The notes under the pieces are model-generated. The model was not told the DNA's origin and did not search any database. It was given only the letters and a program-made list of their open reading frames with translations. This document shows positions 21,143-64,000 of a stretch of 64,000 nucleotides of DNA, in pieces. Made by a program: the position numbers and the translations under genes. Each line of letters starts with the position of its first letter. Position 1 is the stretch's first letter. Origin of the DNA: Haliotis cracherodii (lineage: Eukaryota); the NCBI RefSeq assembly GCF_022045235.1, contig NW_027266270.1, positions 34,906,001 to 34,970,000 on the forward strand, written 5' to 3'.

Positions 21143-22205
21143 TACTAGCCACATAAAGAAACTGTGCACGGAGAAAATATATTCTGGATTGAAATACAAC
21201 ACAGCAAGAACAAAATGATGCAGACGCTGTAGCAGCTGAATGATCGGACCATAAGAAAATGTCAACGGGACCTGAACAACATCTGTTACGATGACGTCAG
21301 AAGATCAAAATGGAGTAGGGGGTCAAACGACAAAGTCATAAAGTCAATAACGGGTATGAAACCCCTGTGCGTGAATCATAGCAGTGCATCGGCGACGCAT
21401 GGAGTCCACCAAATGGGCATGGAAGGCCTGGGGAATGGCCTGCCATATCCTCCTCAAATCCTGTGCCAAGTCACGGACGTTATCTGGAGGATGTGGAAGA
21501 CGACGCAGACGGCGCTCCATTTCATCCCACACATGCTCTATTGGGGAGAGATCTGGAGAAATTACATGCCATGGCAGTAACATGACACTGTTATGGTGAA
21601 GGAAATCCATTGCGATCCTAGCCGTGTGAGGACGAGCGTTGTCCTGTTGAAATGTCAATCCCGGGCCATGACGTTGCAGGAAAGGAATGACCACAGGCCT
21701 CAGAATCTGATCTCTGTAGCCAACACCGGTGATATTGCCCTGAACAACCACCAAATGTGTTCGGTGCCGTGCTGTTATCCCACCCCAAATTATCATAGAG
21801 CCACCTCCAAAACAATTCCTCTCCACAATACAGTTGCGTGCATAACGTTCTCTCAAACGCCGGTAGACACGTTGGCGCCCGTCACTGTGGGAAATGTTGA
21901 ACCTAGATTCATCTGTAAAGACAACATTTCTCCACCATATTCGAGGTTGGCGAACATGATTTCGACACCATCTTAGACGGTTGACTCGATGACGGTGTGT
22001 CAGGATGGGACGTATGGCAGGGCGTCGTGGTCGAATCCCGTACTGACGTCCATAGGCCCCCATCAATGACGTCATATCGCATGGCACGTGCATGTGTGTT
22101 TGAATGTCTCCAATAATTGCTGTGTTCAAACCTATCTTTCATATATGGACAGTGTGCCCTTATATCTATATTTTCTCCGTGCACAGTTTTTTTATGTGGC
22201 TAGTA
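21143..22205 (-). mobile_element. Tc1-family DNA transposon, 1,063 bp, internally deleted
   Basis: 39-bp TIRs TACTAGCCACATAAA(G/A)AAACTGTGCACGGAGAAAATATA (21143-21181 and 22167-22205, one mismatch). TA flanks both ends. Confidence 0.9.
21344..22129 (-). CDS. Tc1 transposase, DD34E catalytic domain; N-terminal DNA-binding region largely missing
   Basis: VVFTDESRF, FQQDNARPH and SPDLSPIEHVW are present, with 34 residues between the second D and the E. Confidence 0.85.
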   Translation of the reverse strand: MNTAIIGDIQTHMHVPCDMTSLMGAYGRQYGIRPRRPAIRPILTHRHRVNRLRWCRNHVRQPRIWWRNVVFTDESRFNISHSDGRQRVYRRLRERYARNCIVERNCFGGGSMIIWGGITARHRTHLVVVQGNITGVGYRDQILRPVVIPFLQRHGPGLTFQQDNARPHTARIAMDFLHHNSVMLLPWHVISPDLSPIEHVWDEMERRLRRLPHPPDNVRDLAQDLRRIWQAIPQAFHAHLVDSMRRRCTAMIHAQGFHTRY

Positions 22206-23970: not shown

Positions 23971-24074
23971 AAGATCTGTATATGAAAATATGTTTTCCAT
24001 TGCAGATGAAAATACAGAAAATCACATGACGCATGTTCAAGGAATGGACAATTCAGGATGAAAAAAAATCTGGC

Positions 24075-25918
24075 ATGGATGACTCTGGTGTGAATGGGAC
24101 AACATCGGCAAAAGATTTGACAGGTAAACTGCATGTAAAAATTCGTATTGTGTGCAGGAAAGCATACACTTACCACCACATATTAGAATTGCAGATATTC
24201 AAAGGTTACTACGTCACAGAAACTCGTAAATCAGTAAGCTTCAAGATTAAACAGTTTAGTTTAAGAACAAATATGTTCTTGTACGACTAACAAACACCAG
24301 TTACACGTCAGCCAAATTGTGTGAAACCTACTTGAAACTATTGGACCCGTAGAGGTCCGGGGTAGAATAGGTCTTCAGCAATCGATGCTTGCTGTAATAG
24401 GCGACGATGCTTGTCGTAACAGGCGACTAACGGGATCGGGTGGTCAGGCCCGATGACTTGGTTGATGCATATCCTCGTATCCCAATTGCGTGGGTCGATG
24501 TTCATGATGTCAACCATCCAGACTCGATTATTTACAGACCGCCGTCATATAGCTGGATTATTGGTGAGTGTGGCGTTAAACAAACAAACAAACTTGAAAC
24601 TATTGACATATTTTATGGATGCTATTTTCTGTGTCAATAACAAAACTGAGTTCTGTCAATGGATTCATTTGCATATTCATGTATGTTTTTTTATTTTGCG
24701 TAAAGTTAATCGTTTATATCACAAGAACACCTGTAGACACAGTAACATTCCCTTTCAGGTTCATGTGAGAAGTGTCAGAGTGTTGAAAGGAGGTATGAGG
24801 ACATATCCTGTGCTCCAAATTTGTTTGTCATTCACACGGAACGCCCTTATATTTGTGCTGGGAAGAGATCTGGACATTTGAGAGAAAAGAAGAAGGTTAT
24901 TGACAGAATAGGTAAAGTGGTGTCGGCTTTAAGGAACAGTGGAGGTGGGCATCTGTTGGTCCATATTGACGGCCAGGAATCGGAAGATAGGTGTCTTGAA
25001 CAGTTTGATGAGGCAATTACAAAGAGTTTGACGGATCTCATTGAAGATGGACAGTTGTATGTAAACATATATAAGCGACAATGGTTGTCGGAGTTGCCTT
25101 TGTCTGATTTTCAAAATGACACTGAATTTATTTGGCTTAATGTGGAAAGTGCTCATGGTGTAGCGACTGTAGATTTCAATACGAAAATAAGAGACGATAT
25201 TGCCAACGAAAATCCCCCATACGTAACAGTGGCATGTTTACTATCCACAACCAAGGCAAGGAGATCACAAAGTGCAGAAGGCCAGAGTACACAAACTGAT
25301 ACTGTAGGCAGCGGTAGTACTGAACATATCGCAACTTTGTTAGAAAACCCACAGCAATATCACGAAAATAGGAACATAGAATACAAGGCATTAAAATCTC
25401 AGATTTTGAAAAAGATCGGGAAAAGTGACTCTGGTTTCGCAGATTACATCTGGACGGACCTGAAACTAAAGTATAATGTGACATCCATGTCAAAGGTGGA
25501 GAACGGGGGTTCATTTTATGTTGGAATTGCTGAGGTGCAAAAGAAATACACAGCACAGTATGGAACCAAAGTGCCGCACATTGAAGGATTTCAATTGACA
25601 GTTGACCCACAGGTTGTAACTAAACTTCTACTTCAAAAACTCAAAGATACCGTTACTGTCTTAAAAGATGGGACTTTCCATGATGCTCCAGATGACCTTA
25701 TCGAGATAACCTTCCACAAGATACCCAGTGGTTACGTGTTAGAAGTTGCCGTGCGTTATTGTGAAGGACTTGTGTTTTATGACAAAGAGGGACCAAGGGC
25801 ATACGAAGTGAAGGGCAATGAAATTCGTCGAATTGATAAAGAAGTGTGGTTGCGACGATTCAGTTTATCTATGAATAACAAAACACTGTGTTTTAAGTGT
25901 AAGGAAAGAGAGTACTGA
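24075..25918 (+). CDS. Schlafen-like (AlbA_2 core) putative RNase, ORF1 copy 1; exons 24075-24123 + 24759-25918, about 402 aa
   Basis: N-lobe VVSALRNSGGGHLLV. C-lobe HENRNIEYK (ExxxxExK), VTSMSKVENGGSFYVGIAE and VLEVAVRYCEGLVF...PRAYEVKGNEIRRIDKEVW, all matching Schlafen-core motifs. Phase-1 intron ACAG|GTAAAC...ccctttcag|GT. The ATG in GGCATGG is conserved in copy 2; another in-frame ATG exists at 24033. Confidence 0.85.
24344..24591 (+). mobile_element. Family B SINE in the ORF1 intron, with TSD
   Basis: TSD ACTTGAAACTATTG at 24330-24343 and 24592-24605. The paralogous intron has an empty site near 59453-59466. Confidence 0.85.
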
Positions 25919-25929
25919 TTTCTTTCAAA

Positions 25930-27883
25930 ATGTCAGACAGTGACTCCAGTCTGTCCAGCTCGTACAGCTCTGATGGACCGTACCTCATGTCGTATGGGAA
26001 GACATATGACTCTGATGAACCTGACGGGAATGAATTCATTTCAGGTAATAGAAAGCAATAAGCAGCCCAATGGGGATGTGTAGGGTTTGACCGCACTGAC
26101 CACCGCCACACAATGAAAACAGCTTGTACCTCTAAGCTATATAGCAGCAAACATTTCCCTTTCATAGTCCAAAAGATTTTATTCACGACATTGATCAGTC
26201 CTGTCAAAGGTCAAGGCCGTTGGCAAGATTGCTTATTTGTCTTACTGCGCTTGTTTGTGTCTGGAATATGATATGCTTAAGTTATCTGGAAAATGATGTC
26301 CTTTAGTACACATCTTTATAGCCTGGGTAACATGTTTTAGACATGGATCCGTCAATTATATTTCTGAAACGGCCATGGTTGATCGGTCACAGCGAAGATT
26401 GTCAGTAAAGTTTGTTTGGCCTTTTCACAAAAATGGCTTCCTTCATCCATCCTGTACGGGTATATATGACAAGTGACGAAAAACTTATGACCAACTTTCA
26501 ATTTGGAGTATATGCGATATTTCTGTTATATTTAACTTCACCGATGGACTTGCAACCGGAGGTCAAATTCATTCTCAAGGTCACACGTTAAAAGATAATG
26601 ATGTTTATGATAATGCAAGAAGTATTTACTGCAATCAGAGTACCTTGAATACATGTTCTTAGGGTGGGGCCTTCATTGAGGGTCAAGGTCACTGGAATTG
26701 TCATTTGTAAGATAGTTCAGATTATTATTATGTGTATGACTTGAAATGAGGAACAACGTTAATAAACGTTCTTATTAAGGTGGTTGGAGGCACTTTCAGC
26801 TTTAAAGTTGTACCAGAGTTCTTTTCCCTAATAGAAATAGTATTGTTGAAGCGGAAGTAACTGTACAGTCGCCTTGCTTTGGTCAATGGCTGTCATTATA
26901 CCGGTTTGGACGCTGAGGTAGGCTTGTGGTGGAAGCCTTCGCTCAACATGCTGTAAACCCGGGTTCGACTCCCCACATTTCACACCCTATTTTTGGTGTG
27001 ATGCTGCTGGAATGCTACTAAAAGCGATGTAAAACCATACTCACTCTCTCGTGTTAAGATTTTAAGAGGCATGGGGCTTTTTGTTAACTAATAGAGACAA
27101 ACACTTTCTAGGTTCATAAGAGAGCTCTGCCAAAGAACAGATTTGACTGTACGATTCCGACTATATCATGAGCATGCGTTTATGAATCACTAACAAATAG
27201 TGATCATACCAGGTGTTCGCCCTAACGGTGTCACCCGTCACAAACACCTTCAAGGGCAAGACAATTCCTCACCTGAAAAAACAGTCCCGACAATAAATGT
27301 CACAATTTGTCACAGCCGGATGTCTTCAATGAGGGACGTGAATCCAGCAAACGGTGTTGGAAACAACCATACATATCGGCTCTTTCAGATAGGTATCCCG
27401 TTCATGCAGGGCAAGCAAACACGTCGCAAAGCAGATTGTGAAAGGAATCGATTCGCAGTCGTCTTGATCTTTTAGGTATGGCCAGTCTTCAAGAAACTGT
27501 AACCTCGCGACACTTTCGAAATAGTTTGTCTCTCCCGAAATTGAATTATGACTATGAACAGTGGAGCTCGATTCTGTCAAGCACTGGGACGGAGCATGCA
27601 ACCGCACCAAATTAGGGAGGCCACGCAAGACATAAGAGCTGCCGTGGGCCACTTCGTTCTTTTACGAGCGCCTTTTATATGCTGCCACTAACAATCATCA
27701 GAAATAAACTTACAATATATACTGCCAAACACGGTAATCTTAATCCCTGCACATCTTAGTAGAACAAGAAATACAGTGTACATATTGATATCACCTGTTT
27801 CTTTACCTGAATTCGCTGAAGTTTTTCACTGCGCATAATGCTCGAAAATCTCATGCATCTACTCTGGTAGAATTATTTGGGTG

Positions 27884-27947
<64 letters not shown>

Positions 27948-30900
27948 CATGCAGAAACTTCAGGATCTCTCCGAGCAGCATGAATGTGAACATGTCCTAG
28001 TTACTGAGGATTTCTTTATTGTGCAGAAAATGACACAACTCTCCAACTCGTTGTTTACTGATCATGCCAGTGCTGTAGCATTCAGACTCTCAATGATCTC
28101 TAAGTAAAGTAAGAACTCCCTTACTTCTCTGATTATTGTTTAAGTAATAACACAATTCATAACAAATACAGTTTCGTATTCTATCATAAACTGCAGATGA
28201 CAAAACAACACCAGTAATAACGTTTTTAGTGCTTGCAATTAGGCCATTTACAAAAAGGCCCAGTGAGCACAGTTCACATACAGTATGCAGTGCGCCAGCT
28301 GTTTATTCAGCAAGTATATTTCAATATTTTTTCATCTTGTTTGTGTTATAGTATCAGTCTGGTATTGGTACTGCTATCACCTTTCTGCTTACCTCTTGCC
28401 TCCAATCAAATATTTGATTTGATTTATGATTTATTTGATTTTATGTATGATTTATTTGATTTTATGTATGATTTATGTGAATTGATTTAATATGATTTCA
28501 ATTTCCTGTTATATGATAACTATGATATACAGTTACAAATAATCAATTAGTTATTTGTAAAAACAAAGTGACCTAAGATTCTATAGTTATCAGGGAATTA
28601 TATACATATATGTTTTTTCTCATCCTCAATTATAAATAATTCGCAAGCCATGGGTTTTTTGGTTTCCATTTCAGAGCATGCATTCCCATCAAGCGTATTG
28701 TCACTTTCTGAACAACATGATATGCTACGTACATTGCACGAAGAATCAGACAAGCCGTGTGAGTAATTCCTTTACTATTCCACAGCCTTCATATAGATTA
28801 TATCTGATAACAATAATTTTACTTGTCATATTAATAATGAAATTCGCTGCTAATATTTGTGCATCATAACAAAACAAGATTCAAACACACATGGATACTT
28901 GAAGTTATGGGACAACTAAACGGTCCTTGTTTTGCGTGTTTTCAGCCTTTTGGATCTTTCCTCAAAATGTAAGAAAGCACCTGTCAGACAAGTTTCCTCT
29001 GATAAAAAGAAGACTGGAGGAACTGCTTCAACAAGACTGTGCCATCATCATAGCGGGTCATAGTTTACTGAACCTGACAGAAGCATACTGGCAGGGCCGA
29101 GTGCCAATGAGTGTCATTTGTGATGTGTGTGTCTTCTCCCGTGCACACCCTCTCATGATCCTCACCTTTACAACAAACAGACCCGAGACAGCTGTCAGAC
29201 ACAACTCATACTTGGCCAGGTCAATCATAAGAGCTATTAAAGGCGAAACGCAGCTGAATTTAAATGTCTTTCATGGCGTTTTGGATGAGAATGTGTGTCA
29301 GGCACGTGAGACATTCCTTGAAACAATAAACCATTTTGAGAAAATCTCCCACGTTCTGGGCTCTCTGTCTTCTCCAACTCATGACATGTACAGAGTACTG
29401 AAAGCCTTTCTGAAAGTTCTACATGATAACCAGCTACAACGACAAAGTAACAGAGAGGTAACTGCTGTTTGTGTTCAAATGACAAATGTATTTTTCAACA
29501 GGAAACATCAATACCCAATCTCATGGAGCTAAAAGTTTAATAACATTTAAGATGGTCTCAAGTATAGCTTTAACATTTTTTGATGAAAATCTCATAACTA
29601 AGAGTTAAAAAAGCACAGTGGTTAAGACCAGTGGGGAAGGCTATGACTAGAAAAGTGAATAGTTTACCACCCTGAATAGTGAGTTGTGTTAACGTCGCTT
29701 TGAACGGTATTCCAGTAATATCACGTCGTGTCACCTCAGTGTGCAGGTCTCAGGCGTTTTCCACTTTGATGAAACCCATGAGCATGTATAAGGTGCTGAC
29801 AAACTCTGAAATGTAATCGGCGCGAACCTGGAGTAAAACCCACGATCATAGATTTCTGGTGTTCCTAAGGGACGCAGCTCAACTCGGCGAATTGCGACGC
29901 CTAAGGAGACTATGTAACCCACCGCGACTAGCGGGATCGGGTGGTCAGGCTTACTTGGTTTATCCATGTCATCGTATCCCAATTGCGTGGATCGATGCTC
30001 GTGATGTCAATCACTGGATTGTCTGGCCCAGACTCGATTATTTACAGACCGCCGCCATATAGATGGAATATTGCTGAAAGCAGATTTAAACAACAAACAA
30101 AACAAAAAATCTTGCATTTGAACCCATTATCATAGGTTTTTGCCATGCCAAAGGAACGCAATTCTGCAAATCAAATTGAGGTAGTCATGTGAAGCTATGA
30201 ACAATCCTTTCCTTGTGTTATCATCAGTTGCCATTGTAATAATTCTTCAATATCATTGCATACTATATATTAAAACAGTTCTACCATTTCATACAATTGT
30301 AGTCCAATGGCAATTGCATAAAAACAACCCCACTCATAGAAATCGGTAACTTATATTTATGATTTACTTCTAAATCAACTACAGAATAACGTCTTTTAAT
30401 CGAACTCCATTACCTATATATTTTAAGATAGCATGTAGCATGACAGTAGCTTTATTGTTTTGGTACATTGCTGATGAGAACTGTAGTCTAATATTCTCGT
30501 GCAGATAACTTGACGTGTTGTCGATGGTTCGAGGACTTGGATTCTACAAGATTTCACTTAATCTACAGAGCCATCGCCATTTAAGAAATAATCTCAAATT
30601 GTTTTCTTTTTATATCTTCCCAGAACAAAGAACAAGACAAAGAGACAGGTTTGCACACCAATAAGTACCAGCAAGATGCAAAATCGGTCAAACCACTTGT
30701 AATATACATCCACTTAGTACGTTTTGCAAAGTCGTAACACTTGACTAATAAACACTCTGGCAGGAGTAAATATGGGTTATTGAAGTTTAAATATTTACAA
30801 ATATCATTAAAAGCAGCACTTAATAACAGGACGCTTTTTCTTATAACATTTCCATGTTGCAACAGAAAGGACTACAACGCAGGAGGCTTCTTCTCAAATG

Positions 30901-33900
30901 ATGGCTCCTGAAGACCATACGGGAGAAAACAGTCATATATCAGCTCTTCCTAAACGACCAGATGACCAGTCGCCATGTCTAGAGGCATCTGCTACTAGTG
31001 CGAACGACAATGGACATGCACCTATTCAAAGACGAGAGGTATGCATGTATTTGTGTATTGGTTTAAGCCTGCTCACGAAGAGAGTTATGAAGGCCAAATA
31101 CATTGCTTGCTTACTTTCCTGGCAACTGCGTTTTATATTAATATGTATTTAGTATTATATATGTTGGACTTCCATTTTTTTAAACCTTGGTGGCTGAGTG
31201 GGTTAGGTCACTGATTTTGTGTTTGTGATGCCGATTAGGCAAATTGATGTTGAATTCACACAAAAAAAGTTCTAGAATTACTTTACAAAGAAAGTGTTCC
31301 CGGATATAACGTGTGTGAATACTTGTCCTGACTTATTCAACTGAGCAATATGTTTAATGTTACATGGGGCGAATACACTCTGTGTGTTTTTCTAACATGT
31401 CACTCCCTATTTTGTCATTAAAGAGCATTAGTGTACAATCACCGATGGGTCTGTTTGGGTTACATGCAACTAATGCTTCGGTCAATGCTTCGGTGACGAC
31501 AGTCCGTATATCCCTCTGTCGGTAACACTCATATTCAAGATCAAATTCGAGGATCTTTGTATTCTTCAGCTTGCAAAACAGAGATCGTCCTTAATGTTGG
31601 GTTAGGCATGGCTATGTTTCGTTAGTCGCCGCTATTCGCTGTGCAGGGACATGCGTGTAACTTAGCAGGTGGTTCTGATCCCAGATTCACTCTCAGTATG
31701 ATTCTTGGTGTGTCAGCACCGTACCGTTGTTCGTGGGTTTAACTGAAGTGGTAATCGTCTGAGACCTACAACACATCAGGCTTTCATCCCACAACATATT
31801 GACAAGACTGAAAAACAACGTTTAAAATCAAGTCACTCACATTTTATGTGTGTGTTCCAATGTCTCTCTCGGATATACATCTATGTGGGTACATTTAAAT
31901 GTTTTGTGTGGCCAGTGGAATTTCTGCAATCTGGCAGAAATGGTCAATTTTGTGTTCATCCCAGTGAATGTAAAAAATATAAGTCGGGCTACTTTCATCC
32001 CAATATGATGTCAGGGAATCCAGATGCAAGGTGATGGTTACTTTGACACCTTCTTCCTGGGCCAATGTGCACAAAATGATCTTTCCGCTACAATTATTGT
32101 AAATCCATAACTTTGCAAACCACAATCGAAATTTACAATTGGTGTGGTCCAACTTTGAGTAATCCCTTAACATACTTAACAAAATGGCGCGCAATACTGG
32201 GTCTAATTGCAATAAATCCGCTTGTGAGAGTCATATCAATGCTTGGCAAAATATGTAGAACGCATCACAGATATCAGAAAATTGCGATGACAATCCACAT
32301 TAATATCTTGTCGATAATCTAAAATTTCGTGTCCATCCGAGTCTATGCAGACATAATTATAAAAAGAATCTCGCATCTTGCCTTGATCTCTTAACATTTT
32401 TTTAGATGCTACTCTGCGTTCTTTTGCTTCTGACTTTGGATGTGTATTAAAACATTCGTCACCTAATTCATGTCACGCCACAAAATGTATTCCCCTGCAT
32501 GGAATGTTTTTCTCATTTTCTCCTCTATGTATCTGTTTCTAACTAACGGTGAGAAGATATGCTGTTGATTTAACTTCACCTATAAGTATTGCCTGTGTAT
32601 TGTTCAATGAAAAACTACACATTCGATCATTATATGGTCATATTCTGCGTCAATTAACATTCGAGCCATATCGCGATGGGAAATACTCAAATGTAGAGAT
32701 GTAAAATGTTTCTATTGGTATGGCTAATATATGGTGATAACAGATTCTTGTCTCAGTGCCATATATCGGTACACTTTCCACATAGATGTATATAACTTCA
32801 AAACTGTCTACTACTGGGACTTGCTCCGTGTATTGTTACTTACACTTAAACTTAGACTTAGACTTTTGTTGAACCAGTTCCATAAAACCATTACTCACAC
32901 TTCAGTATGACGATCTTCTAAAGAGAATCGAGCAGCTGGAGCAAAGACAAGAAGGTAAGCTTCAGGTTAACCATCATATTTAGGGGCTTTGCTGAAGTAT
33001 AAATCTTTTAGTGAATGAGTATTGTTTTACGCAGCGTTTAGCAATATTCCAGCAATACCACGGCGGGGGACACCAGAAATGGGCTTCACACATGGTACTC
33101 ATGTGGGGAATCGAGCCCGAGCGAACGCTTTAACCACTGGGATACACCGCCCTTATAACTTTTTTTAACAACACATCGTTCATTAACAGTTGATATGTCA
33201 TTCAACATCTGCTTTCTTGAGTTTATATATATATATATATATATTGTTACTGATGTGGTTTCATTTACAGACATCCTGCAAGAAAAGGTAAACAATTCAT
33301 ACATTTCTTTCTTGTCTTTGTTAAAAAAAGTGATTTGTTCTGAAGTAGTAACATCATTTAATGTATACATGTTTGTCTTCTCACACTCATGTCATCCATA
33401 TTACAACTAATATCGAGGAATATTCCCGCAGCTCCAGACCTTGGAGCCTATTTTTCACAACTTTTGAGGCAATCAAGCATGCTCTTTCTACCGAGATTTC
33501 AAAGAGCGTCATACAACTCAGAAGTTGTTTGATCAAGGTTACAGCATTCAAGGCCTCAGTAAAACTTTCAAAATGTTTTATGGAAGACATGTGGAGGAGA
33601 TTTCCAAATTAGACGCATCAGTGACTGAATGATGTCAAATTCAATTCCCTATTTTAACTTGTACCATGTGTTCCCGTGTTTTATTCAGGTGAACAATTGA
33701 ATCTGCCTTTGCATGTGTTTGTGACGGATGCCACCGATGGTGGATGATACACTCACATTTTCCCGAACACATGGTATCATCACTATTTGAAAATGATTAA
33801 GTAACAAATTTTCATGATATAGTTAAAATCGTACAATCGACTCCGTTTTTTGCAGAGATTTATAGTCCGTTGCATTTCTTTATACAGGAAATGCTGCATC

Positions 33901-35655
33901 AAGATTACTTGACGGGTGGGTAGACATACATATTTTTGATTGGTTACATAATACCCCCCCCCCCCAATATGTATGCATGTGTTGTCAGAACACATGTAAA
34001 CAAAAACAGACAAAAAGAATTCAAACAAATAAAGAAGTGACCGTGTCGGAATTGAACCCTTGTAATGAGTGAGCACCTTGACTTCAAAGCTTCCTTTTTG
34101 TTTGTTTACAAGTGCATGTTTGCATTATTATCTCTCCTTTGTGCACAGTGCACTGAATAAAAGTCTTAATAACTCATAATCATAACTCATAACTCATCAC
34201 TGACACGTAATACTTACCTTGACATATTTTGTCTTTCAGATGTACGCCTGTCTCTCTTGATGAGAGTCAGATCCTCCTCATTCTCAAAGTCTGATTCTGG
34301 ATTCTGTAAGTAATCCAAGGGTCCAAACGTTGATAAAGTAGCCGGCCATGTTGAATCTCTCAGCCGAGAAGAAAACACTCACCAATCGGAGGCTCGACTA
34401 ACCTGTCGAACTAAATCTTCCTACAGTAATAACGTTTGCTCTATAAGATTGAAGACAGAAGGTATCAATGGAAACTGTCAATAGAATCAGAACAACATAT
34501 TCACATTTCGATATATTATCGGACAAGAGGATGATAAAGTATTGACTCATAACGGAATTCATGATATATGGGTGTGTTTGCCGGTAAGATAAAGCCAAAG
34601 TCATTTTTTTATTTATTCATAATACAGGATAATTACCGTCCCAATACATACGGATGTTAACCTCGGTACAGGAACAAAGGTTTTATTTCCAGATAACTAT
34701 CAGTTCAACGTACTTTAGAATACAGCAATGGTGTATGGTTGTATAAACTTCTGTGATCACTTGATTGACCAAATAACAGTTGCTGTCGTTTTATATAGCT
34801 GAGACTGGATTGCTATATTTGACCCTCTAACTAATGTTTATGACAGTTTTACATTTTCTTTAAGCAACATCTACTTCAACGAGCGACAAGGGCAGAATAT
34901 CAGATGCCGGAAAAGGGGATAAACGTGAGTTCAGTTCGAGTTTATAAATGAAAACAATCCCTGAAAATACATATCAGCTTTAAGCCTATCTCGAGAGATG
35001 AGGCCTCTTAACGTCCCCTTCACATGTTTTGCATATGTATTGCGAGCATGATGGCATGTTGTGGGTTGTGAACTATTGCTGAAGATCCCTAAACATTTCA
35101 CAAATTAAGGGTAATAGTTGTTGATAGATTTTCGACACAGAATACCCTATCTGTTCACTGCTGTCCCTCAAAGGACCAACAATACTTACATTGTTTAACA
35201 AGTCGAATTTTCCTTAATTAAGATACTACAATTTCACTGTGTACGCATTTGTGAGAAATGCATTTTTTGTTTTACCCAAGGCGACAATGTGACAACGAGA
35301 CATTACATTCAAGGTCAAAATATATCGCATTTTCGCCCCATCGAAAATGACTGAAAGAAGCGTAAATATTGGCGACATTATCGCGTTGTCGTGCATTTTA
35401 ACGCCTTGTTTTACACATTGGGGCGACAATAAAACATATTTTGACCTTGAAAAATGTCGCATTGTCGCATTTTAGCGCTTTGGTTAATTTTGACACTGTT
35501 TTCTTTTTGGAAGGGCGACAACGCGACAACGTGTCAGTGTCCCTTAGTGAACATTTACAGTCATGTCAACGTATTTCTCCACAAGAAGCAATTCTAACAA
35601 CATATATGAGATCTCTATTTTCAGACACACACACACACACACACACACGCACGCA

Positions 35656-35705
<50 letters not shown>

Positions 35706-38189
35706 TAGTAAATATCACCTTTAAACGTTTACAATGACTATGTGTATCTAGACACCACACAACCAAACCATACAGATAGAAATAGAAGGGGTCAACTGTT
35801 TTGCTAAGTTTCACTTAAACGTTTGCGGGGATATTCATGAAAAAGGCGCTGCTGAAGTATTCATCTTTATTGCACAATATTATTGTCAATAATTGTTAAT
35901 ATAGATGATCGTTGTGAAGCTCAAGGTGAACACCTACCTCAGCTGACAAGAAAAGAAATAGATGGAGGCGACCTGGAGTTGGTCAAATTCAACCGAGAGG
36001 CTTCTCTACATGAGGCGTGTCAGGAGGGCAACCTGGATGCCGTGACGCACATCGTGTCCGGGGGACTGGCTGATATCAACTGTAGAGGCAGGCTGGGCAG
36101 AACTCCAGTCATGGTGGCAGCAAAGGCAGGGCACCTGTCAATAGTTAACTTCTTGATCAGGCAAAGCTGTGGTATCTTAGAGGTTGATCACAATAATGAC
36201 ACTGTCCTCCATGTTGCCTGTATGAGTGGAAATGTGGATGTGTTTAAATGTATTCTGTCAAGAAATACTATCAACATGGAGAAGAGAGGGCGATATGGAT
36301 GGACAGCCATAGGCACATCTGCGTTTTATGGCGCGAAAAATGTCTTTGACTTCATTATTAGGAAAGGGTGTGATATGTCAGTGGTCGATGATGATGGTGA
36401 CAACATCCTTCACTTGACATGTCTTGGTGGCAATGTCGAGATCTGCAAGTTCCTCCTCTCAAAAGACATAGTTGGAATAGAGAGTAGAGGAAAATACAAC
36501 AGAACACCCGTGATGAAAGCAGCTAGCAAGGGTCACAGAGAACTGTTTGAGTTCCTTGTGAGTAGAGGGTGTGATCTGTCAGTAGTGGATGGGTATGGAG
36601 AAAACATCCTTCACGTGACGTGTCTTGGTGGCAATGTCGACATCTGCAAGTACCTCCTCTCAAAAGACATAGTTGGAATAGAGAGTAGAGGAAAATACAA
36701 CAGAACACCCGTGATGAAAGCAGCTAGCACTGGTCACAGAGAACTGTTTGAGTTCCTTGTGAGTAAAGGGTGTGATCTGTCAGTAGTGGATGGGAATGGA
36801 GACAACATCCTTCACGTGACATGTCTTGGTGGCAATGTCAACATCTGCAAGTACCTCCTCTCAAAAGACATAGTTGGAATAGAGAGTAGAGGACGATACA
36901 ACAGAACACCCGTGATGACAGCAGCTAGCATGGGTCATAGAGAACTGTTTGAGTTCCTTGTTTGTAAAGGGTGTGATCTGTCAGTACTGGATGGGAAGGG
37001 GAACAACATCCTTCACTTGACATGTATTGGTGGCAATGTCGACATCTGCAAGTACCTCCTCTCAAAAGACATTGTTGGAATAGAGAGTAGAGGACGATAC
37101 AACAGAACACCCGTGATGACAGCAGCTAGCATGGGTCATAGAGAACTGTTTGAGTTCCTTGTTTGTAAAGGGTGTGATCTGTCAGTACTGGATGGGAAGG
37201 GGAACAACATCCTTCACTTGACATGTATTGGTGGCAATGTCGACATCTGCAAGTACCTCATCTCAAAAGACATAGTTGGAATAGAGAGTAGAGGACGATA
37301 CAACAGAACACCCGTGATGAAAGCAGCTAGCATGGGTCATAGAGAACTGTTTGAGTTCCTTGTTTGTAAAGGGTGTGATCTGTCAGTACTGGATGGGAAT
37401 GGAGACAACATCCTTCACTTGACATGTATTGGTGGCAATGTCAACATCTGCAAGTACCTCCTCTCAAAAGACATAGTTGGAATAGAGAGTAGAGGACAAA
37501 ACAACAGAACACCCGTGATGAAAGCAGCAAACCAGGGTCACAGAGAACTGTTTGAGTTCCTTGTGAGTAAAGGGTGTGATCTGTCAGTACTGGATGGCAA
37601 TGGAGACAACATCCTTCACGTGACATGTCTTGGTGGCAATGTCGACAACTGCAAGTACCTCCTCTCAAAAGATGTAGTTGGCTTAGAGAATAGAGGACGA
37701 TACAACAGAACACCCGTGATGACAGCTGCTAGCAAGGGTCACAGAGAACTGTTTGACTTCCTTGTGAGTAAAGGGTGTGATCTGTCAGTAGTGGATGGGA
37801 ATGGAGAAAACATCCTTCACTTGACATGTCTTGGTGGCAATGTCAATATCTGCAAGTACCTCCTCTCAAAAGACATAGTTGGAATAGAGAGTAGAGGACA
37901 ATACAACAGAACACCCGTGATGACAGCAGCGAGCCAGGGTCACAGAGAACTGTTTGACTTCCTTGTGAGTAAAGGGTGTGATTTGTCAGTACTGGATTGG
38001 AATGGGAACAACATCCTTCACTTGACGTGTCTTGGTGGCAATGTCAACATCTGCAAGTACCTCATCTCAAAAGACATAGTTGGAATAGAGAGTAGAGGAC
38101 AATACAACATGACACCCGTGATGATGGCAGTAAACAAGGGTCACAGAGAACTGTTTGAGTTCCTTGTGAGTAAAGGGTGTGATCTGTGA
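25930..38189 (+). CDS. ORF2: Ser/Asp-rich N-terminus + Schlafen SWADL-like linker domain + short-exon linker + about 22 ankyrin repeats (about 1,100 aa)
   Basis: Phase-consistent GT-AG model: 25930-26044, 28946-29457, 30624-30648, 30866-31038, 32906-32954, 33271-33287, 33888-33915, 34240-34305, 34865-34924, 35905-38189 (3,330 nt, no internal stop). Start context is TTCAAAATG. The small exons are the least certain part. Confidence 0.65.
27887..27945. repeat. (GT)n microsatellite
   Basis: Seen directly. An interrupted version is at about 62057-62098 in the paralogous block. Confidence 0.95.
28946..29457 (+). CDS. ORF2 exon 2: Schlafen middle (SWADL-type linker) domain
   Basis: Acceptor ttttgcgtgttttcag|CC (phase 1) and donor GAG|GTAACT. 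AIIIAGHSLLNL...VICDVCVFSRAHPLMILTF...YLARSIIRAI resembles the vertebrate SLFN linker as I recall it (ILIFSRSWAVDL...VICDALLIAQNSTPILYTI...TAFTLKQKL). Confidence 0.7.
29680..29910 (-). mobile_element. tRNA-derived SINE (family C)
   Basis: Reverse complement resembles 39115-39380 and 49850-50090 (CATGCTCATGGGTTTC...GAGACCTGCA). Confidence 0.6.
33010..33150 (-). mobile_element. tRNA-derived SINE (family A)
   Basis: GGGGACACCAGAAATGGGCTTCACACAT...GGGAATCGAGCCC is the reverse complement of family A. Confidence 0.8.
33400..33830 (+). mobile_element. Penelope-like element 3' fragment
   Basis: KLFDQGYSIQGLSKTFKMFYGRH. The nucleotide sequence is similar to 11880-12090. Confidence 0.6.
35626..35702. 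repeat. (CA)n/(CACG)n compound microsatellite
   Basis: Seen directly. Confidence 0.95.
35905..38189 (+). CDS. ORF2 terminal exon: ankyrin-repeat array
   Basis: Acceptor aatatag|AT (phase 1). Four diverged ANK repeats, then nine near-identical 67-aa double-ANK units (NILHxTCLGGNV / RTPVMxAASxGH), ending at TGA 38187-38189. Confidence 0.9.
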
Positions 38190-38660
38190 GTAGTGGATGA
38201 GAATGGTGACAAAATCCTTCACGTGACGTGTATTGGTGTCAATGTCGACAACTGCAAGTACCTCCTCTCAAAAGACATAGTTGGCATAGAAAGTAGATAA
38301 AAATACAACAGAACACCCGTGATGAAAGCAGCTAGCAATGGTCACAGAGAACTGTTTGAGTTCCTTGTTTGTAAAGGGTGTGATCTGTCAGTAGTGGATG
38401 GGAATGGAGACAACATCCTTCACGTGACATGTCTTGGTGGCAATGTCGACATCTGCAAGTACCTCCTCTCAAAAGACATAGTTGGAATAGAGAGTAGAGG
38501 ACAATACAACATGACACCCGTGATGACAGCAGCTAGTAATGGTCACAGAGAACTGTTTGAGTTCCTTGTGAGTAAAGGATGTGATGTGTCAGTACTGGAT
38601 TGGAATGGGAACAACATCCTTTACGTGACATGTCTTGGTGCCAATGTCGACATCTGCAAT
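36366..38660 (+). repeat. 201-bp coding tandem repeat, about 11.5 units
   Basis: The G-C-D codon block recurs every 201 bp from 36366 to 38577. Confidence 0.95.
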
Positions 38661-38831
38661 TACCTCTTCACGAGAGGGATAACTGATAAGATGTGTAAAA
38701 AGAATAAACGTGGTGAAAAACCACTGCAAGTTGCAGAATCACGTGGCCACAAAGTTGTTGTTGGCATTCTGAAATCCGTTCCGAAACGAGGGTTGAGGCG
38801 TAGCTTTTTCAGCAGAAAGAAGACGCAGTAG
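38190..38831 (+). pseudogene. In-frame continuation of the ankyrin array and original C-terminus beyond two stops
   Basis: Same frame as 35905-38189. A second stop (TAA) is at 38298-38300, followed by intact units, a capping repeat (KPLQVAESRGH) and a basic tail ending at TAG 38831. Confidence 0.75.
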
Positions 38832-45382: not shown

Positions 45383-46100
45383 ATGCGTGCATATATGTGT
45401 ACATGTATGTATATGTGTATGAATATGGGTAAATGTTTGTGTGTGTATGNNNNNNNNNNNNNNNNNNNNNNNNNNNNNNNNNNNNNNNNNNNNNNNNNNN
45501 NNNNNNNNNNNNNNNNNNNNNNNNNNNNNNNNNNNNNNNNNNNNNNNNNNNNNNNNNNNNNNNNNNNNNNNNNNNNNNNNNNNNNNNNNNNNNNTGTGCG
45601 GATGTACTTACATTTGTGTATGCGCGTTTGTACATTTGTGTATGTGCGTGTGTACATTTGTGTATGTGCGTTTGTACATTTGTGTATGTGTGTGTGCGTT
45701 TGTACATTTGTGTGTGTGTATGCGCGTATGTGCATTTGTGTTTGTGCATGTGCGTATGTACATTTGTGTATGTGTGTGTGCGTTTGTACATTTGTGAGTG
45801 TGTATGCGCGTATGTGCATTTGTGTTTGTGTATGTGCGTATGTAACATTTGTGTTTGTGTGTGTGCGTGTGTACATTTGTGTGTGTGTATGCGCGTATGT
45901 GCATTTGTGTATGTGCGTATGTACATTTGTGTATGTGTGTATGTACATTTGTGTATGTGCGTTTGTACATTTGAGTATGTGTATGTGCGTATGTACATTT
46001 GTGTATGTGTGTATGTACATTTGTGTATGTGCGTATGTTACTTATTTTTGTGTATGTGCTTTTGTACATTTGTGTATGTGCGTATGTACATTTGTGTATT
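45383..46100. repeat. Degenerate TG-rich simple satellite containing an assembly gap (N at 45450-45594)
   Basis: Reiterated TGTACATTTGTGTATGTGCG variants plus a run of Ns. Confidence 0.95.
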
Positions 46101-59198: not shown

Positions 59199-60767
59199 AT
59201 GGTTGACTCTGGTGTGAATGGGACAACATCGGCCAAAGATTTGACCGGTAAACTGCATGTAAAAATGTATTGTTTACAGAAATGTACACACTAAGCACTA
59301 CATATTAGAACTGCAGATATTCAAAGGTTACCACATAAAAGAAACTGTGACTCGTAAGTCAGTAATCTTCAAATGTAAATAGTTCATTTAAAGTTATTTT
59401 CTGGTACTGTTAACAAACATTAGGTACATGTAAGCTAAATTGTGTGAAACTTACTTGAAACTTTTGACGTATTTTATGGATGCTCTTTTCTGTGTCAATA
59501 ACAAAACTGAGTTCTATCAATGGATTCATTAACATCTTCATGTATTTACTTAGAATAAAATGAATCCCCTATATCACAAGAACACCTGTAAGCACATTAA
59601 CATTCCCTTTCAGGTTCATGTGAGAAGTGTCAGAGTGTTGAACGGAGGTATGGGGACATATCCTGTGCTCTGAATTTGTTTGTCATTCACACGGAACGAC
59701 CTCATATTTGTGCTGGGAAGAGATCTGGACATTTGAGAGAAAAGAAGAAGGTTATTGACAGAATTGGTAAAGTGGTGTCGGCTTTAAGGAACAGTGGAGG
59801 TGGGCATCTGTTGGTCCATATTAACGGCCAGGAATCGGAAGATAGGTGCCTTGAACAGTTTGATGAGGCAATTACAAGGAGTTTGTCGGATCTAATTGAA
59901 GATGGACAGTTGTATGTAAACATATACAGGCGACAATGGTTGTCGGAGTTGCCTTTGTCTGATTTTCAAAATGACACTGACTTTATTTGGCTTAATGTGG
60001 AAAGTGCTCATGGTGTAGCGACTGTAGATTTCAATACGAAAATAAGAGACGATATTGCCAATGAAAATCCCTCATACGTCACAGTGGCATGTTTACTATC
60101 CACAACCAAGGCAAGGAGATCACAAAGTGCAAAATGTCGAGAAACTGATACTGTAGGCAGCAGTACAACTGAACATTTCGCATCTTTGTTCAATAACCCA
60201 CAGCAATATCACGAAAATAGGAACATAGAATACAAGGCGTTAAAATCTCAGATTTTGAAAAAGATCGGGAAAAGTGACTCTAGTTTCGCAGATTACATCT
60301 GGACGGACCTGAAACTAAAGTATAATGTGACATCCATGTCAAAGGTGGATAACGGGGGTTCATTTTATGTTGGAATTGCCGAGGAGCAAAAGAAATACAT
60401 AGCAGAGTATGGAACCAAAGTGCCGATCATTGAAGGATTTCAACTGACAGTTGACCCGCAAGCCGTAACTAAACTTATACTTCAAAAACTCAAAGATACC
60501 GTTACTGTCTTAAAAGATGAGACTTTCCATGATGCTCCAGATGGCCTTATCGAGATAATCTTCCACAAGATACCCAGTGGTTACGTGTTAGAAGTTGCTG
60601 TGCGTTATTGTGAAGGAATTGTTTTTAATGACAAAGAAGGACCGAGGGCATACGAAGTGAAAGGCAATGAAATTCGTCGTATTGATAAAGAAGAGTGGTT
60701 GCGACGTTTCAGTTTATCTATGAATAACAAAACACTGTGTTTTAAGTGTAAGCAAAGAGAGTACTGA
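59199..60767 (+). CDS. Schlafen-like (AlbA_2 core) putative RNase, ORF1 copy 2; exons 59199-59247 + 59614-60767, about 400 aa
   Basis: GCCATGG start and a phase-1 intron ACCG|GTAAAC...ccctttcag|GT. Same motifs as copy 1, including HENRNIEYK. The frame is intact. Confidence 0.85.
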
Positions 60768-60778
60768 TTTCTTTCAAA

Positions 60779-60893
60779 ATGGCAGACAGTGACTCCAGTG
60801 TGTCCAGCTCGTACAGCTCTGATGGGCCGTACCTCATGTCGTATGGGAAGACATATGACTCTGATGAACCTGACGGGAATGCAGTCATTTCAG
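60779..60893 (+). CDS. ORF2 copy 2, first coding segment (the rest lies beyond the window)
   Basis: TTCAAAATGG start 11 nt after the ORF1 stop; MADSDSSVSSSYSSDGPYLMSYGKTYDSDEPDGNAVIS, then G|GTAAAA. It is 115 nt long, the same as copy 1. Confidence 0.7.
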
Positions 60894-63250: not shown

Positions 63251-64000
63251 ACCAGTAATAACGTTTTTAGCGCTTGCAATTAGGCCATTTACAAAAAGAT
63301 CCAGTGAGCACAGTTCACAGGAGCTAATCCATTGCACACAACAGGACATGTCATATTGGCGGGGGATCTGAGTATTTCATGCTTATCAAATATTTGATGA
63401 AATTTCTTTGTCAAGTACTAGAAATTTCAAACAAAACATCTACCCGTGTAACATACAGGATGCAGTGCTCCAGCTGTTTATTCAGCATGTACATTTCAAT
63501 ATTTATTTCATCTTGTTTGTGTTATAGTATCAGTCTGGTATTGCCACTGCTATCACCTTTCTGCTTACCTCTTGCCTCCAATCAAATATTTGATTTGATT
63601 TATGATTTATTTGATTTATTAGTTGCAGTAAAATACATAATTAATTTATTTGTAAAAAAATGTGACCTAAGAATCTATAGTTATCAGGTAATTATATACA
63701 TATATGTTTCTCTCATCCTCAATTATAAATAACTCGTAAGCCATAGGTTTTTTGGTTTTCATTTTAGTGCATGCATTCCCATCAAGCGTATTATCACAGT
63801 CTGAACAACATGATATGCTACGTACATTGCACGAAGAATCAGACAAGCCGTGTGAGTAATTCCTTTACTATTCAACAGCCTTCATATAGATTAAATCTGA
63901 TAACAATAATTTTACTAGTCATATTTATAATGAAATTCGCTTGTAATATTTGGGCATCATCACAAAAACAAGATTCAAACACACGTGAATATTTAAAGTT

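What the first reader, a model, noticed from the sequence alone, without database searches (positions are those of the whole stretch)
25898..26050. Stop-11 nt-ATG junction is identical in both paralogues; reinitiation or -1 frameshift is needed
Seen: AGAGAGTACTGATTTCTTTCAAAATG occurs at 25907-25932 and 60756-60781, although the two ORF1 proteins differ at about 30 positions. The ORF2 frame (-1) is open only back to TAA 25900-25902, so it overlaps the last four or so ORF1 codons. No canonical X_XXY_YYZ slippery site is present. The ORF1 stop lies 126 nt upstream of the next exon junction, which by the usual 50-55-nt rule would invite NMD unless ORF2 is translated. Inference: termination-reinitiation is the simplest mechanism. 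A non-canonical -1 shift, or a 1-nt indel older than the duplication, would instead give a roughly 1,500-aa fusion.
Basis: partly seen in the sequence, partly recalled or inferred. Interest (0 to 1): 0.8.

Follow-up and report, generated by a model that had tools for sequence, protein, structure and literature searches.

The report
Two-cistron split Schlafen gene in abalone
In abalone, an antiviral-type Schlafen protein is encoded as two back-to-back reading frames on one spliced RNA, and dozens of sister genes share this layout, so the second protein must start at its own ATG by a route still to be found.

Summary
The sequence facts are right: the 26-mer with TGA, 11 nt and ATG sits at 25907-25932 and 60756-60781. 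Its identity in both copies is not special. The copies are 92% alike, and the identical run holding the stop ranks 24th of 107.

The stronger evidence lies elsewhere.
- Spliced RNA contigs from four runs cross the stop and ATG without any indel, then splice on to ORF2 exons.
- The genome, Haliotis cracherodii, holds at least 124 ORF1 matches. In 31 of 70 loci examined, a conserved Ser/acidic ORF2 start follows the ORF1 stop. The spacer is -38 to 738 nt, all three frames occur, and A stands at -3 in 27 of 31. This excludes frameshift, readthrough or an old indel as the general mechanism.
- ORF1 is a complete Schlafen RNase core. ORF2 carries the Schlafen SWADL domain plus ankyrin repeats. The gene is therefore split in the connector loop.
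- RefSeq already lists both ORFs as separate proteins.

How ribosomes reach ORF2 is untested. Reinitiation is favoured here; a minor ORF2-only isoform is the main rival. Another reader noted the same pattern elsewhere in this genome.

The parts
24006..24123 (+). Exon A: 5' leader with a 12-codon uORF (24026-24061) and the ORF1 start ATG 24075. It holds the first 16 codons plus 1 nt of ORF1.
   Evidence: Joint 24120->24756 (cut +3, GT..AG) appears in all 4 runs. X1 record 1 carries 50 more nt upstream of 24005. Sequence read.
24759..25915 (+). ORF1 body: a Schlafen RNase core (both lobes). ORF1 is 402 codons in all, counting exon A.
   Evidence: The family profile hits SLFN11/12/14/5 cores, best E 7.9e-20, over profile positions 40-361. 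24 of 37 members hit Pfam SLFN_AlbA_2. RNA contigs cover the region.
25916..25918 (+). ORF1 stop codon TGA.
   Evidence: It is unchanged in the contigs of all 4 runs, and no indel is listed between 25277 and 28123.
25919..25929 (+). 11-nt pyrimidine-rich spacer (TTTCTTTCAAA) with no ATG and no AG.
   Evidence: The third copy, L002, has the same spacer.
25930..26044 (+). ORF2 start (ATG 25930, A at -3) and its first 38 codons plus 1 nt: a Ser/acidic-rich N-terminus with the family motif SS.Y.SDG. It lies in the same exon as ORF1.
   Evidence: HMM hit E 4e-14. The contigs X1 rec4, X2 rec17, X5 rec24 and X12 rec9 run through it. RefSeq proteins of the sister copies start at this ATG.
28675..28758 (+). 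It is phase 1-1 and keeps the frame.
   Evidence: Contig pieces 28667-28758 in X1 and X12. AG|, |GTGAGT and the 8-nt joint ambiguity were read. P0112 residues 37-66 match it.
28946..29457 (+). ORF2 exon encoding the Schlafen SWADL (linker) domain.
   Evidence: AlphaFold model with pLDDT 86.8. The Foldseek top 13 are all Schlafens, E 1.5e-5 to 1.5e-3. VIA Z is 12.8-15.9 to 11 SLFN entries from chain residue 385-405 onward, and the next hit has Z 5.5. 7 of 21 family members hit Pfam SLFN_GTPase-like. Contigs cover it.
35905..38831 (+). Ankyrin-repeat part of ORF2 (open frames 35883-38189 and 38319-38831). The exact exon limits, and the exon or exons between 29457 and 35905, were not settled.
   Evidence: Pfam Ank_2 E 9.5e-141 and 1.2e-25. 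A phase mismatch between 29457 (phase 0) and the AG at 35903-04 was read.
59199..59247 (+). Copy 2: ORF1 start (ATG 59199) in its exon A.
   Evidence: Sequence read. The N-terminus of P0001 fits it.
59614..60893 (+). Copy 2: the exon holding the ORF1 body, TGA 60765-67, the 11-nt spacer, ATG 60779 and the ORF2 first segment up to 60893|GT.
   Evidence: P0001 (XP_071100462.1) matches 59607-60764 at 99.7%, and P0112 residues 16-38 match 60824-60892 at 100%.
63768..63851 (+). Copy 2: the 84-nt ORF2 exon.
   Evidence: Sequence read. P0112 residues 37-66 match 63761-63850.

Best explanation
This is a two-cistron 'split Schlafen' gene. One spliced mRNA carries ORF1 and, 11 nt after its TGA and in the same exon, ORF2. 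ORF1 (402 codons) is a complete Schlafen RNase core. ORF2 (about 1,200 codons) has an acidic Ser-rich N-terminus, the Schlafen SWADL domain and ankyrin repeats. The cut falls where vertebrate Schlafens have a flexible connector loop.

ORF2 is made as a separate polypeptide from its own AUG (25930; 60779 in copy 2). It is not made by frameshift, readthrough or a sequence error. The layout is an old, selected feature of a large abalone gene family.

Shown: the anatomy, the continuity of the RNA contigs, the family-wide layout and the domain identities.

Inferred: in this subfamily ribosomes that end ORF1 most likely resume on the spot and reinitiate at the AUG. The grounds are the 11-nt spacer, the absence of an intervening AUG and the A at -3. 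Making both halves from one mRNA would favour their assembly into a two-chain Schlafen.
For: RNA:
- Four runs from four studies give contigs spliced at GT..AG joints. These contigs run unbroken from ORF1 across the stop and ATG, then on into exons 28675-28758 and 28946-29457: X1 rec4, X12 rec9, X2 rec17 and X5 rec24.
- No indel is listed at the junction and the stop is unchanged.
- The intron at 26200-26999 has depth of about 0.
- Contig depth over ORF2 is not above that over ORF1: 18.4 vs 24.1, 10.2 vs 15.5, 23.5 vs 20.1, and 8.2 vs 7.2-7.5 (all).

Family:
- 124 ORF1 matches in the genome.
- 31 of 32 SWADL-exon matches lie 0.8-5.9 kb behind an ORF1 match on the same strand.
- 31 of 70 loci have a conserved ORF2 N-terminal peptide after the ORF1 stop. 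The relative frames are 12/10/9, and A stands at -3 in 27 of 31.
- 102 of 107 public relatives end within 48 aa of the core.

Domains. SLFN14 domain limits come from passages of PMC12135189.

Annotation: RefSeq lists both ORFs of copy 2 as separate proteins. The ORF2 models start at this ATG in H. cracherodii, H. rufescens and H. asinina. None of the 120 ankyrin proteins retrieved contains a core.

Leaky scanning is excluded: 23 ATGs lie between the two start codons.
Against: - No translation data exist for ORF2.
- Contigs built from short reads can merge two overlapping transcripts, so a single bicistronic molecule is not proven. The tool itself warns of this.
- Reinitiation after a 402-codon ORF is normally inefficient (my knowledge).
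- No TURBS-like UGGGA lies in the 150 nt before the stop.
- No significant local RNA structure was found, z -1.36, and no Rfam element.
- Sister genes tolerate spacers of 409-738 nt, intervening ATGs and one 38-nt overlap. This fits a stop-coupled mechanism poorly.
- The junction also looks like a 3' splice site: CTGAT, a pyrimidine tract and CAG, in phase with exon A.
- The listed joints were truncated (15 of 69 shown).
Confidence: 0.5

Rival explanations
1. ORF2 is translated from a minor, ordinary monocistronic mRNA of the same locus. Such an mRNA could start at an internal transcription start in or after ORF1. It could also come from an isoform in which exon A is spliced to the CAG at 25934-36, so that ORF1 is skipped. 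On the bicistronic RNA ORF2 would then be mere 3' UTR.
For: - The junction holds a branch-point-like CTGAT (25915-19), the tract TTTCTTTC and CAG|25937.
- Exon A ends in phase 1, and a joint at 25937 would be in the ORF2 frame (read).
- Spacers of up to 738 nt in sister genes leave room for their own promoters.
- Contigs cannot show RNA starts, and only 15 of 69 joints were listed.
Against: - No contig piece shows a 24123->25937 joint, and no contig breaks at 25937 in any of the 4 runs (table 8, a truncated list).
- ORF2 contig depth is not above ORF1 depth.
- The start ATG with A at -3, and a frame closed just upstream, are kept across the family. A splice-fed frame would not need either.
- The splice-like signals are not shared by distant paralogues.
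- The RefSeq clusters of the four orthologous or paralogous ORF2 proteins have one member each and start at the ATG.
Confidence: 0.28
2. Ribosomes enter internally (IRES-like or other cap-independent entry) near the ORF2 AUG on the bicistronic mRNA, independently of ORF1 termination.
For: - ORF2 starts work at very different distances from the ORF1 stop, including one overlap. This fits a mechanism that ignores the stop.
- The spacer here is A/U-rich and pyrimidine-rich.
Against: - No conserved sequence or structure lies upstream of the AUG across paralogues.
- The local fold is not significant, z -1.36, and there is no Rfam match.
- Cellular IRES claims have a poor record (my knowledge).
Confidence: 0.1
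3. A fused, canonical Schlafen is also made. One route is a rare splice from the GTAAGG at 25899 to exon 28946, which would be in frame. The other is a non-canonical -1 shift within 25903-25915.
For: - The GT at 25899-25900 is kept in all three close copies.
- Exon-end phase 1 matches the phase-1 acceptor at 28946 (read).
- One public relative, P0034 of H. rufescens (798 aa), has core and SWADL in one predicted protein.
Against: - No contig shows such a joint. All four runs read straight through 25899.
- There is no slippery heptamer.
- The paralogues use all three frames and often have extra in-frame stops in the spacer.
- No RefSeq ankyrin protein carries a core, 0 of 120.
- P0034 has no close counterpart in this genome; the best match is 38% identical.
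Confidence: 0.07
4. The stop or the frame break is an assembly error or a recent pseudogenising mutation.
For: None found.
Against: - Three genomic copies have the same junction.
- Contigs from four independent runs carry the same stop and no indel.
- The layout is shared by paralogues at 30-50% identity and by RefSeq models in three species.
Confidence: 0.01

Closest known systems
Vertebrate Schlafen proteins of subgroups II and III (SLFN5, 11, 12, 14)
   Same: - The RNase core fold and sequence profile match.
- A SWADL domain follows the core.
- The cut lies where SLFN14 has a disordered connector, residues 351-378 (passages of PMC12135189).
   Different: - Core and SWADL lie on two separate reading frames with a stop and a new AUG between them.
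- The C-terminal module is ankyrin repeats, not an SF1 helicase.
- ORF2 has an added Ser/acidic N-terminus.
- ORF1 alone resembles a subgroup I (core-only) Schlafen.
Dicistronic cellular genes of animals, such as Drosophila stoned, Adh/Adhr, and human SNURF-SNRPN (recalled, not checked in a call)
   Same: Two conserved ORFs lie on one mature mRNA with a short spacer, and the way ORF2 is read is often unsettled.
   Different: - Here a whole family of dozens of paralogues keeps the layout.
- The two cistrons are the halves of one known multidomain protein.
- ORF1 is long (402 codons) and holds 23 internal ATGs.
Termination-reinitiation of caliciviruses and influenza B (TURBS), and LINE-1 ORF1/ORF2 (search listings of PMC2793014 and PMC3035654; LINE-1 recalled)
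   Same: A long ORF1, a stop close to the ORF2 AUG, and no leaky scanning possible.
   Different: - No UGGGA motif lies upstream.
- Sister genes work with spacers of up to 738 nt.
- Nothing has been tested functionally.
Polycistronic nuclear genes of green algae and fungi (search listings and abstracts, PMC11291117 and PMC11952965)
   Same: Nuclear, capped polycistronic mRNAs that encode functionally linked proteins.
   Different: By its abstract the algal case works by leaky scanning past a short or weak ORF1 start.

Membership tests
Schlafen family | N-terminal RNase core (two AlbA_2-like lobes) | tested here: met
   - Family profile A1 against the PDB: SLFN11 core E 7.9e-20, and also SLFN12, 14, 5 and rat Slfn, over profile positions 40-361.
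- 24 of 37 members hit Pfam SLFN_AlbA_2.
- The window protein alone is below the Pfam cut-off, 17.9 vs 25.3 bits, and finds no Schlafen by phmmer.
Schlafen family | Catalytic acidic motif E-x4-E-x-K and GGS..G..[DE] | tested here: met
   E202, K209, G249, G250, S251, G255 and E258 are invariant or nearly invariant in A1, and they align to the SLFN11 motif. Activity was not tested.
Schlafen subgroups II and III | SWADL domain after the core | tested here: met
   The exon 28946-29457 model matches only Schlafen SWADL regions, Z 12.8-15.9 against 5.5 for the next hit (Foldseek). By sequence the match is weak: PDB profile E 0.36, and 7 of 21 members hit Pfam SLFN_GTPase-like.
Schlafen subgroups II and III | Core and SWADL in one polypeptide | tested here: not met
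   A stop at 25916-18 and a new ATG at 25930 lie between them. 102 of 107 relatives end within 48 aa of the core.
Bicistronic cellular mRNA | Both ORFs on one mature transcript | tested here: inconclusive
   Spliced contigs from 4 runs bridge both ORFs. Contigs can merge overlapping transcripts, and no long reads were available.
Bicistronic cellular mRNA | Both ORFs conserved as coding | tested here: met
   The ORF1 family, the ORF2 N-terminal peptide and the SWADL exon are all conserved among paralogues.
Termination-reinitiation (TURBS type) | Stop and restart codon close or overlapping | tested here: met
   The spacer is 11 nt here. It is not general in the family, where it ranges from -38 to 738 nt.
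Termination-reinitiation (TURBS type) | Upstream 18S-complementary motif (UGGGA) | tested here: not met
   No TGGGA in the 150 nt before the stop. The motif itself is recalled.
Termination-reinitiation (TURBS type) | ORF2 output depends on ORF1 termination | not testable with these tools
   This needs reporters or ribosome profiling.
-1 programmed frameshift | Slippery X_XXY_YYZ heptamer in the overlap plus a downstream structure | tested here: not met
   No heptamer in 25903-25918. The fold has z -1.36. The paralogues use all three frames.

The most novel reading that the evidence does not exclude
Abalone, and perhaps gastropods generally, have an efficient way to restart translation after a 400-codon ORF. 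A whole immune-type gene family would exploit it to make the RNase core and the SWADL-ankyrin half of a Schlafen as two chains from one mRNA, assembled co-translationally. That would be a natural, family-wide, two-subunit Schlafen system.
Probability: 0.25. Interest if true: 0.85.

Novelty: new variant of a known kind. Interest (0 to 1): 0.62.

Why it matters
Schlafens are innate-immunity RNases known as single chains. Here the chain is cut at its flexible connector into two cistrons, and selection has kept this layout through a large expansion of the family and across abalone species.

If both cistrons are read from one mRNA, this is a natural system of many independent replicates (spacers from -38 to 738 nt). 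It could be used to learn how animal ribosomes reach a second long ORF.

It would also show that the RNase core and the SWADL-effector half can work as separate subunits.

For annotation, it explains why abalone RefSeq holds hundreds of 'uncharacterized' 400-aa proteins, each next to a 'phosphatase 6 ankyrin subunit-like' protein.

My searches found no paper on this.

Tried and rejected
- Leaky scanning: rejected, because 23 ATGs lie between the two starts.
- TURBS motif: absent.
- Local RNA structure: an 8-bp hairpin (25904-11 with 25919-26) holds the stop in its loop. The region's z is only -1.36, and variants in the sister copies and in run X1 break pairs.
- Rfam: no match in 24000-30000.
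- Distance from the stop to the first ATG across 69 loci: not different from the null (median 20 vs 28 nt), so I dropped it as a statistic.
- ATG depletion in the spacers: none clear (counts).
- Single-sequence searches gave nothing useful. These were the PDB with ORF1 and with exon 3, Pfam with exon 3, and the search for homologous proteins with exon 3, which returned 0 hits within its length band of 94-297 aa.
- P0034, the one public core+SWADL fusion: it has no close locus in this genome (best 38%), so I could not inspect it.
- SL trans-splicing: the 11-nt spacer has no AG, and no loose ends near the junction are among those listed (a truncated list).
- Other gastropods: stand-alone core proteins exist in Littorina saxatilis and Batillaria attramentaria. 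I could not fetch their DNA, so I do not know whether their genes are bicistronic.
Full report
**Observation**

- The 26-mer AGAGAGTACTGATTTCTTTCAAAATG occurs exactly twice, at 25907-25932 and 60756-60781.
- ORF1 ends at TGA 25916-18 and the next ATG is at 25930. That ATG lies in the -1 frame, which is open back only to TAA 25900-02. No slippery heptamer lies in the four-codon overlap.
- The two copies belong to a tandem duplication that is 91.8% identical over about 2 kb, introns included.
- The identical run that holds the stop is 28 nt long and ranks 24th of 107 runs. Five of the 23 longer runs lie wholly within the downstream intron, the longest of them 64 nt.
- So the identity of the junction says nothing by itself. 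A third copy, 107 kb downstream (L002), has the same junction.

**Transcripts**

The single read-laying run used four runs from four studies and four coded organisms. The runs are labelled 'RNA?' and are kept as Logan contigs.

- They are RNA. All four show the GT..AG joint 24123|24759, which joins a 5' exon holding ATG 24075 to the ORF1 exon.
- In each run one contig runs unbroken from ORF1 across the stop, the spacer and the ATG to the exon end, then continues spliced:
  - X1 record 4: 25859-26036 | 28667-28758 | 28946-29457
  - X12 record 9: 25584-26036 | 28667-28758 | 28946-29316
  - X2 record 17: 25469-26038, then 28946-29457
  - X5 record 24: 25629-26036, then 28946-29203
- The apparent joint 26036|28667 is 26044|28675, because the eight letters CATTTCAG stand on both sides. 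It is phase 1-1, so his frame survives.
- No run lists an indel between 25277 and 28123, and the stop is unchanged. The variants at 25904, 25951 and 25977 are those of the sister copies.
- The intron has no depth. The contig depth of the ORF2 part is equal to or below that of ORF1.
- Caveat given by the tool: contigs can merge overlapping transcripts, and they show no RNA ends. Only 15 of 69 joints were listed.

**Organism and annotation**

- Contig lengths of G000 equal those recorded for Haliotis cracherodii RefSeq proteins. For example, C80 is 60,096,789 bases.
- XP_071100462.1 (P0001, 400 aa, 'uncharacterized protein') is ORF1 of copy 2 (window 59607-60764, 99.7%).
- P0112 (1,267 aa, 'phosphatase 6 regulatory ankyrin repeat subunit B-like') is ORF2 of copy 2. 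It starts at ATG 60779 and uses the 84-nt exon.
- ORF2 proteins with the same N-terminus are annotated for the L002 copy (P0116), for H. rufescens (P0114) and for H. asinina (P0118).
- None of the 120 ankyrin proteins retrieved contains a core.

**The family**

- ORF1 has 124 matches in the 1.18-Gb genome, nearly all with an open frame of about 350-440 aa.
- I examined 70 loci: 30 came, and 40 more of the longer matches were chosen by me. Many are recent duplicates of each other, so the counts are not independent events.
- An HMM was built inside a script from peptides picked by a short motif. It found a conserved ORF2 N-terminus (Met, then Ser/Asp/Glu-rich, then SS.Y.SD[GE]E) within 1 kb after the ORF1 stop in 31 of 70 loci.
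- The corrected spacers run from -38 to 738 nt. Fourteen are at most 81 nt, 20 are at most 282 nt, and 11 are at least 409 nt.
- The frame relative to ORF1 is 2, 0 or 1 in 12, 10 and 9 loci. A stands at -3 in 27 of 31. The frame is closed a few codons upstream of the ATG.
- Of the 7 frame-0 loci with spacers of at most 282 nt, 6 have further in-frame stops.
- Four more loci look the same by eye. The other 35 were not resolved.
- The SWADL-type exon has 32 matches. Of these, 31 lie 0.8-5.9 kb behind an ORF1 match on the same strand, one of them as a second match behind the same ORF1 (distances worked out by hand).
- In public proteomes, 102 of 107 relatives end within 48 aa of the core match. 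Of the 10 top relatives I looked up, nine are named and all nine are Haliotis (H. asinina, H. rufescens, H. rubra, H. cracherodii); the tenth carries no name. More distant ones include Littorina and Batillaria.
- Another first-stage note records the same pattern on another piece of this genome.

These data exclude any frame-specific recoding, or a single old indel, as the way ORF2 is made.

**What the two ORFs are**

- The ORF1 family profile matches solved Schlafen cores end to end. SLFN11 scores 7.9e-20, and SLFN12, 14 and 5 also match. The acidic catalytic motif is kept.
- The exon 28946-29457 folds confidently, with pLDDT 86.8. It matches only Schlafens. The Foldseek top 13 have E 1.5e-5 to 1.5e-3, then a gap to 0.09. 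VIA gives Z 12.8-15.9 for 11 entries, aligned from chain residue 385-405 onward, and the next hit has Z 5.5.
- By passages of PMC12135189, SLFN14 has its RNase domain at 9-350, a disordered connector at 351-378 and the SWADL domain at 379-570. The SWADL fold has no other structural homologue.
- So the abalone gene is a Schlafen cut in its connector. ORF2 adds an acidic N-terminus and ends in ankyrin repeats.

**Mechanism**

Shown:
- two ORFs
- continuous spliced contigs
- ORF2 defined by its own conserved AUG
- leaky scanning impossible (23 ATGs between the starts)

Inferred: how the ribosome gets to the ORF2 AUG.

For reinitiation in this subfamily:
- an 11-nt spacer
- no intervening AUG
- A at -3
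- no excess of ORF2 depth over ORF1 depth

Against reinitiation:
- the length of ORF1
- no TURBS-like motif
- no significant RNA structure and no Rfam hit
- sister genes with long spacers, intervening ATGs or an overlap

The main rival is a minor ORF2-only mRNA. The junction resembles a 3' splice site (CTGAT, a pyrimidine tract, then CAG|25937), and that site is in phase with exon A. No contig shows this joint, and distant paralogues lack these signals.

A GTAAGG at 25899 is in phase with exon 28946 and could give a fused isoform. Again no contig shows it.

**Verdict**

- Frameshift, an old indel and assembly error are excluded.
- Reinitiation is plausible but untested.
- The real interest is the family-wide, cross-species split of a Schlafen into two cistrons. 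I found no paper describing it.

Noticed in passing
window 25915-25937: The stop and spacer read like a 3' splice site: branch-point-like CTGAT, then TTTCTTTC, then CAG|. A joint from exon A (phase 1) to 25937 would be in the ORF2 frame. No contig shows it.
   Followed up: partly
window 25899-25904: A GTAAGG donor-like site lies inside the CxxC tail of ORF1, in phase with the SWADL exon at 28946. It would give a canonical fused Schlafen. It is kept as GTAAGC in the sister copies. No contig shows the joint.
   Followed up: partly
window 25904-25926: An 8-bp purine/pyrimidine hairpin holds the TGA in its loop. The region's z is -1.36, and variants in the sister copies and in run X1 break pairs.
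   Followed up: yes
window 24026-24061: A 12-codon upstream ORF lies in the 5' leader, out of frame with the ORF1 start at 24075.
   Followed up: no
window 24200-24600, 27000-27200, 29600-29999: Intronic pieces of a very abundant repeat. Summed contig depth reaches 10^4-10^5 in all four RNA runs, with many 'goes back' and 'skips' joints between 24380-24560 and 29926-29999.
   Followed up: no
window 21344-22129 (-): A Tc1/mariner-type transposase frame (Pfam DDE_3 1.2e-9; HTH_Tnp_Tc3_2 1e-4, below its cut-off) lies just upstream of the gene.
   Followed up: partly
window 38186-38318: The ankyrin frame is closed by a TGA at 38190-38192 (the open frame listed runs to 38189), where other repeats read Ser. 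The spot also reads GTGAGT. The next repeat unit holds a TAA at 38298-38300. This is either a decayed repeat spliced out or a truncated gene. Copy 2's RefSeq ORF2 is 1,267 aa.
   Followed up: no
window 29457 to 35905: Exon 28946-29457 ends in phase 0, but the AG at 35903-04 before the ankyrin exon needs phase 1. At least one more exon must lie between them. Contigs X12 rec11 and X5 rec25 carry 402 and 218 further letters beyond 29457.
   Followed up: no
L006-L021 (G000 contig C20 cluster): In this subfamily the ORF1-ORF2 spacer is 409-738 nt and is built of tandem units of about 24 nt that end right at the ORF2 ATG.
   Followed up: no
L017, L025, L029, L032 (G000 contig C4): The 44-63-nt spacer holds a conserved 5-codon mini-ORF (MLTLF or MLILF) between the ORF1 stop and the ORF2 ATG.
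   Followed up: no
window 24761-25915 vs 59616-60764: The two ORF1 copies differ by 33 non-synonymous and 20 synonymous codon changes out of 385. That is fast protein evolution, as in immune gene families.
   Followed up: partly
P0097/P0109: A 1,040-aa 'ATP-binding protein' of the bacterium Endozoicomonas euniceicola, a marine-invertebrate symbiont genus, matches the core weakly (E 2.7e-4, residues 430-719).
   Followed up: no
window 45450-45594: A run of 145 N lies between the two copies. I left it alone.
   Followed up: no
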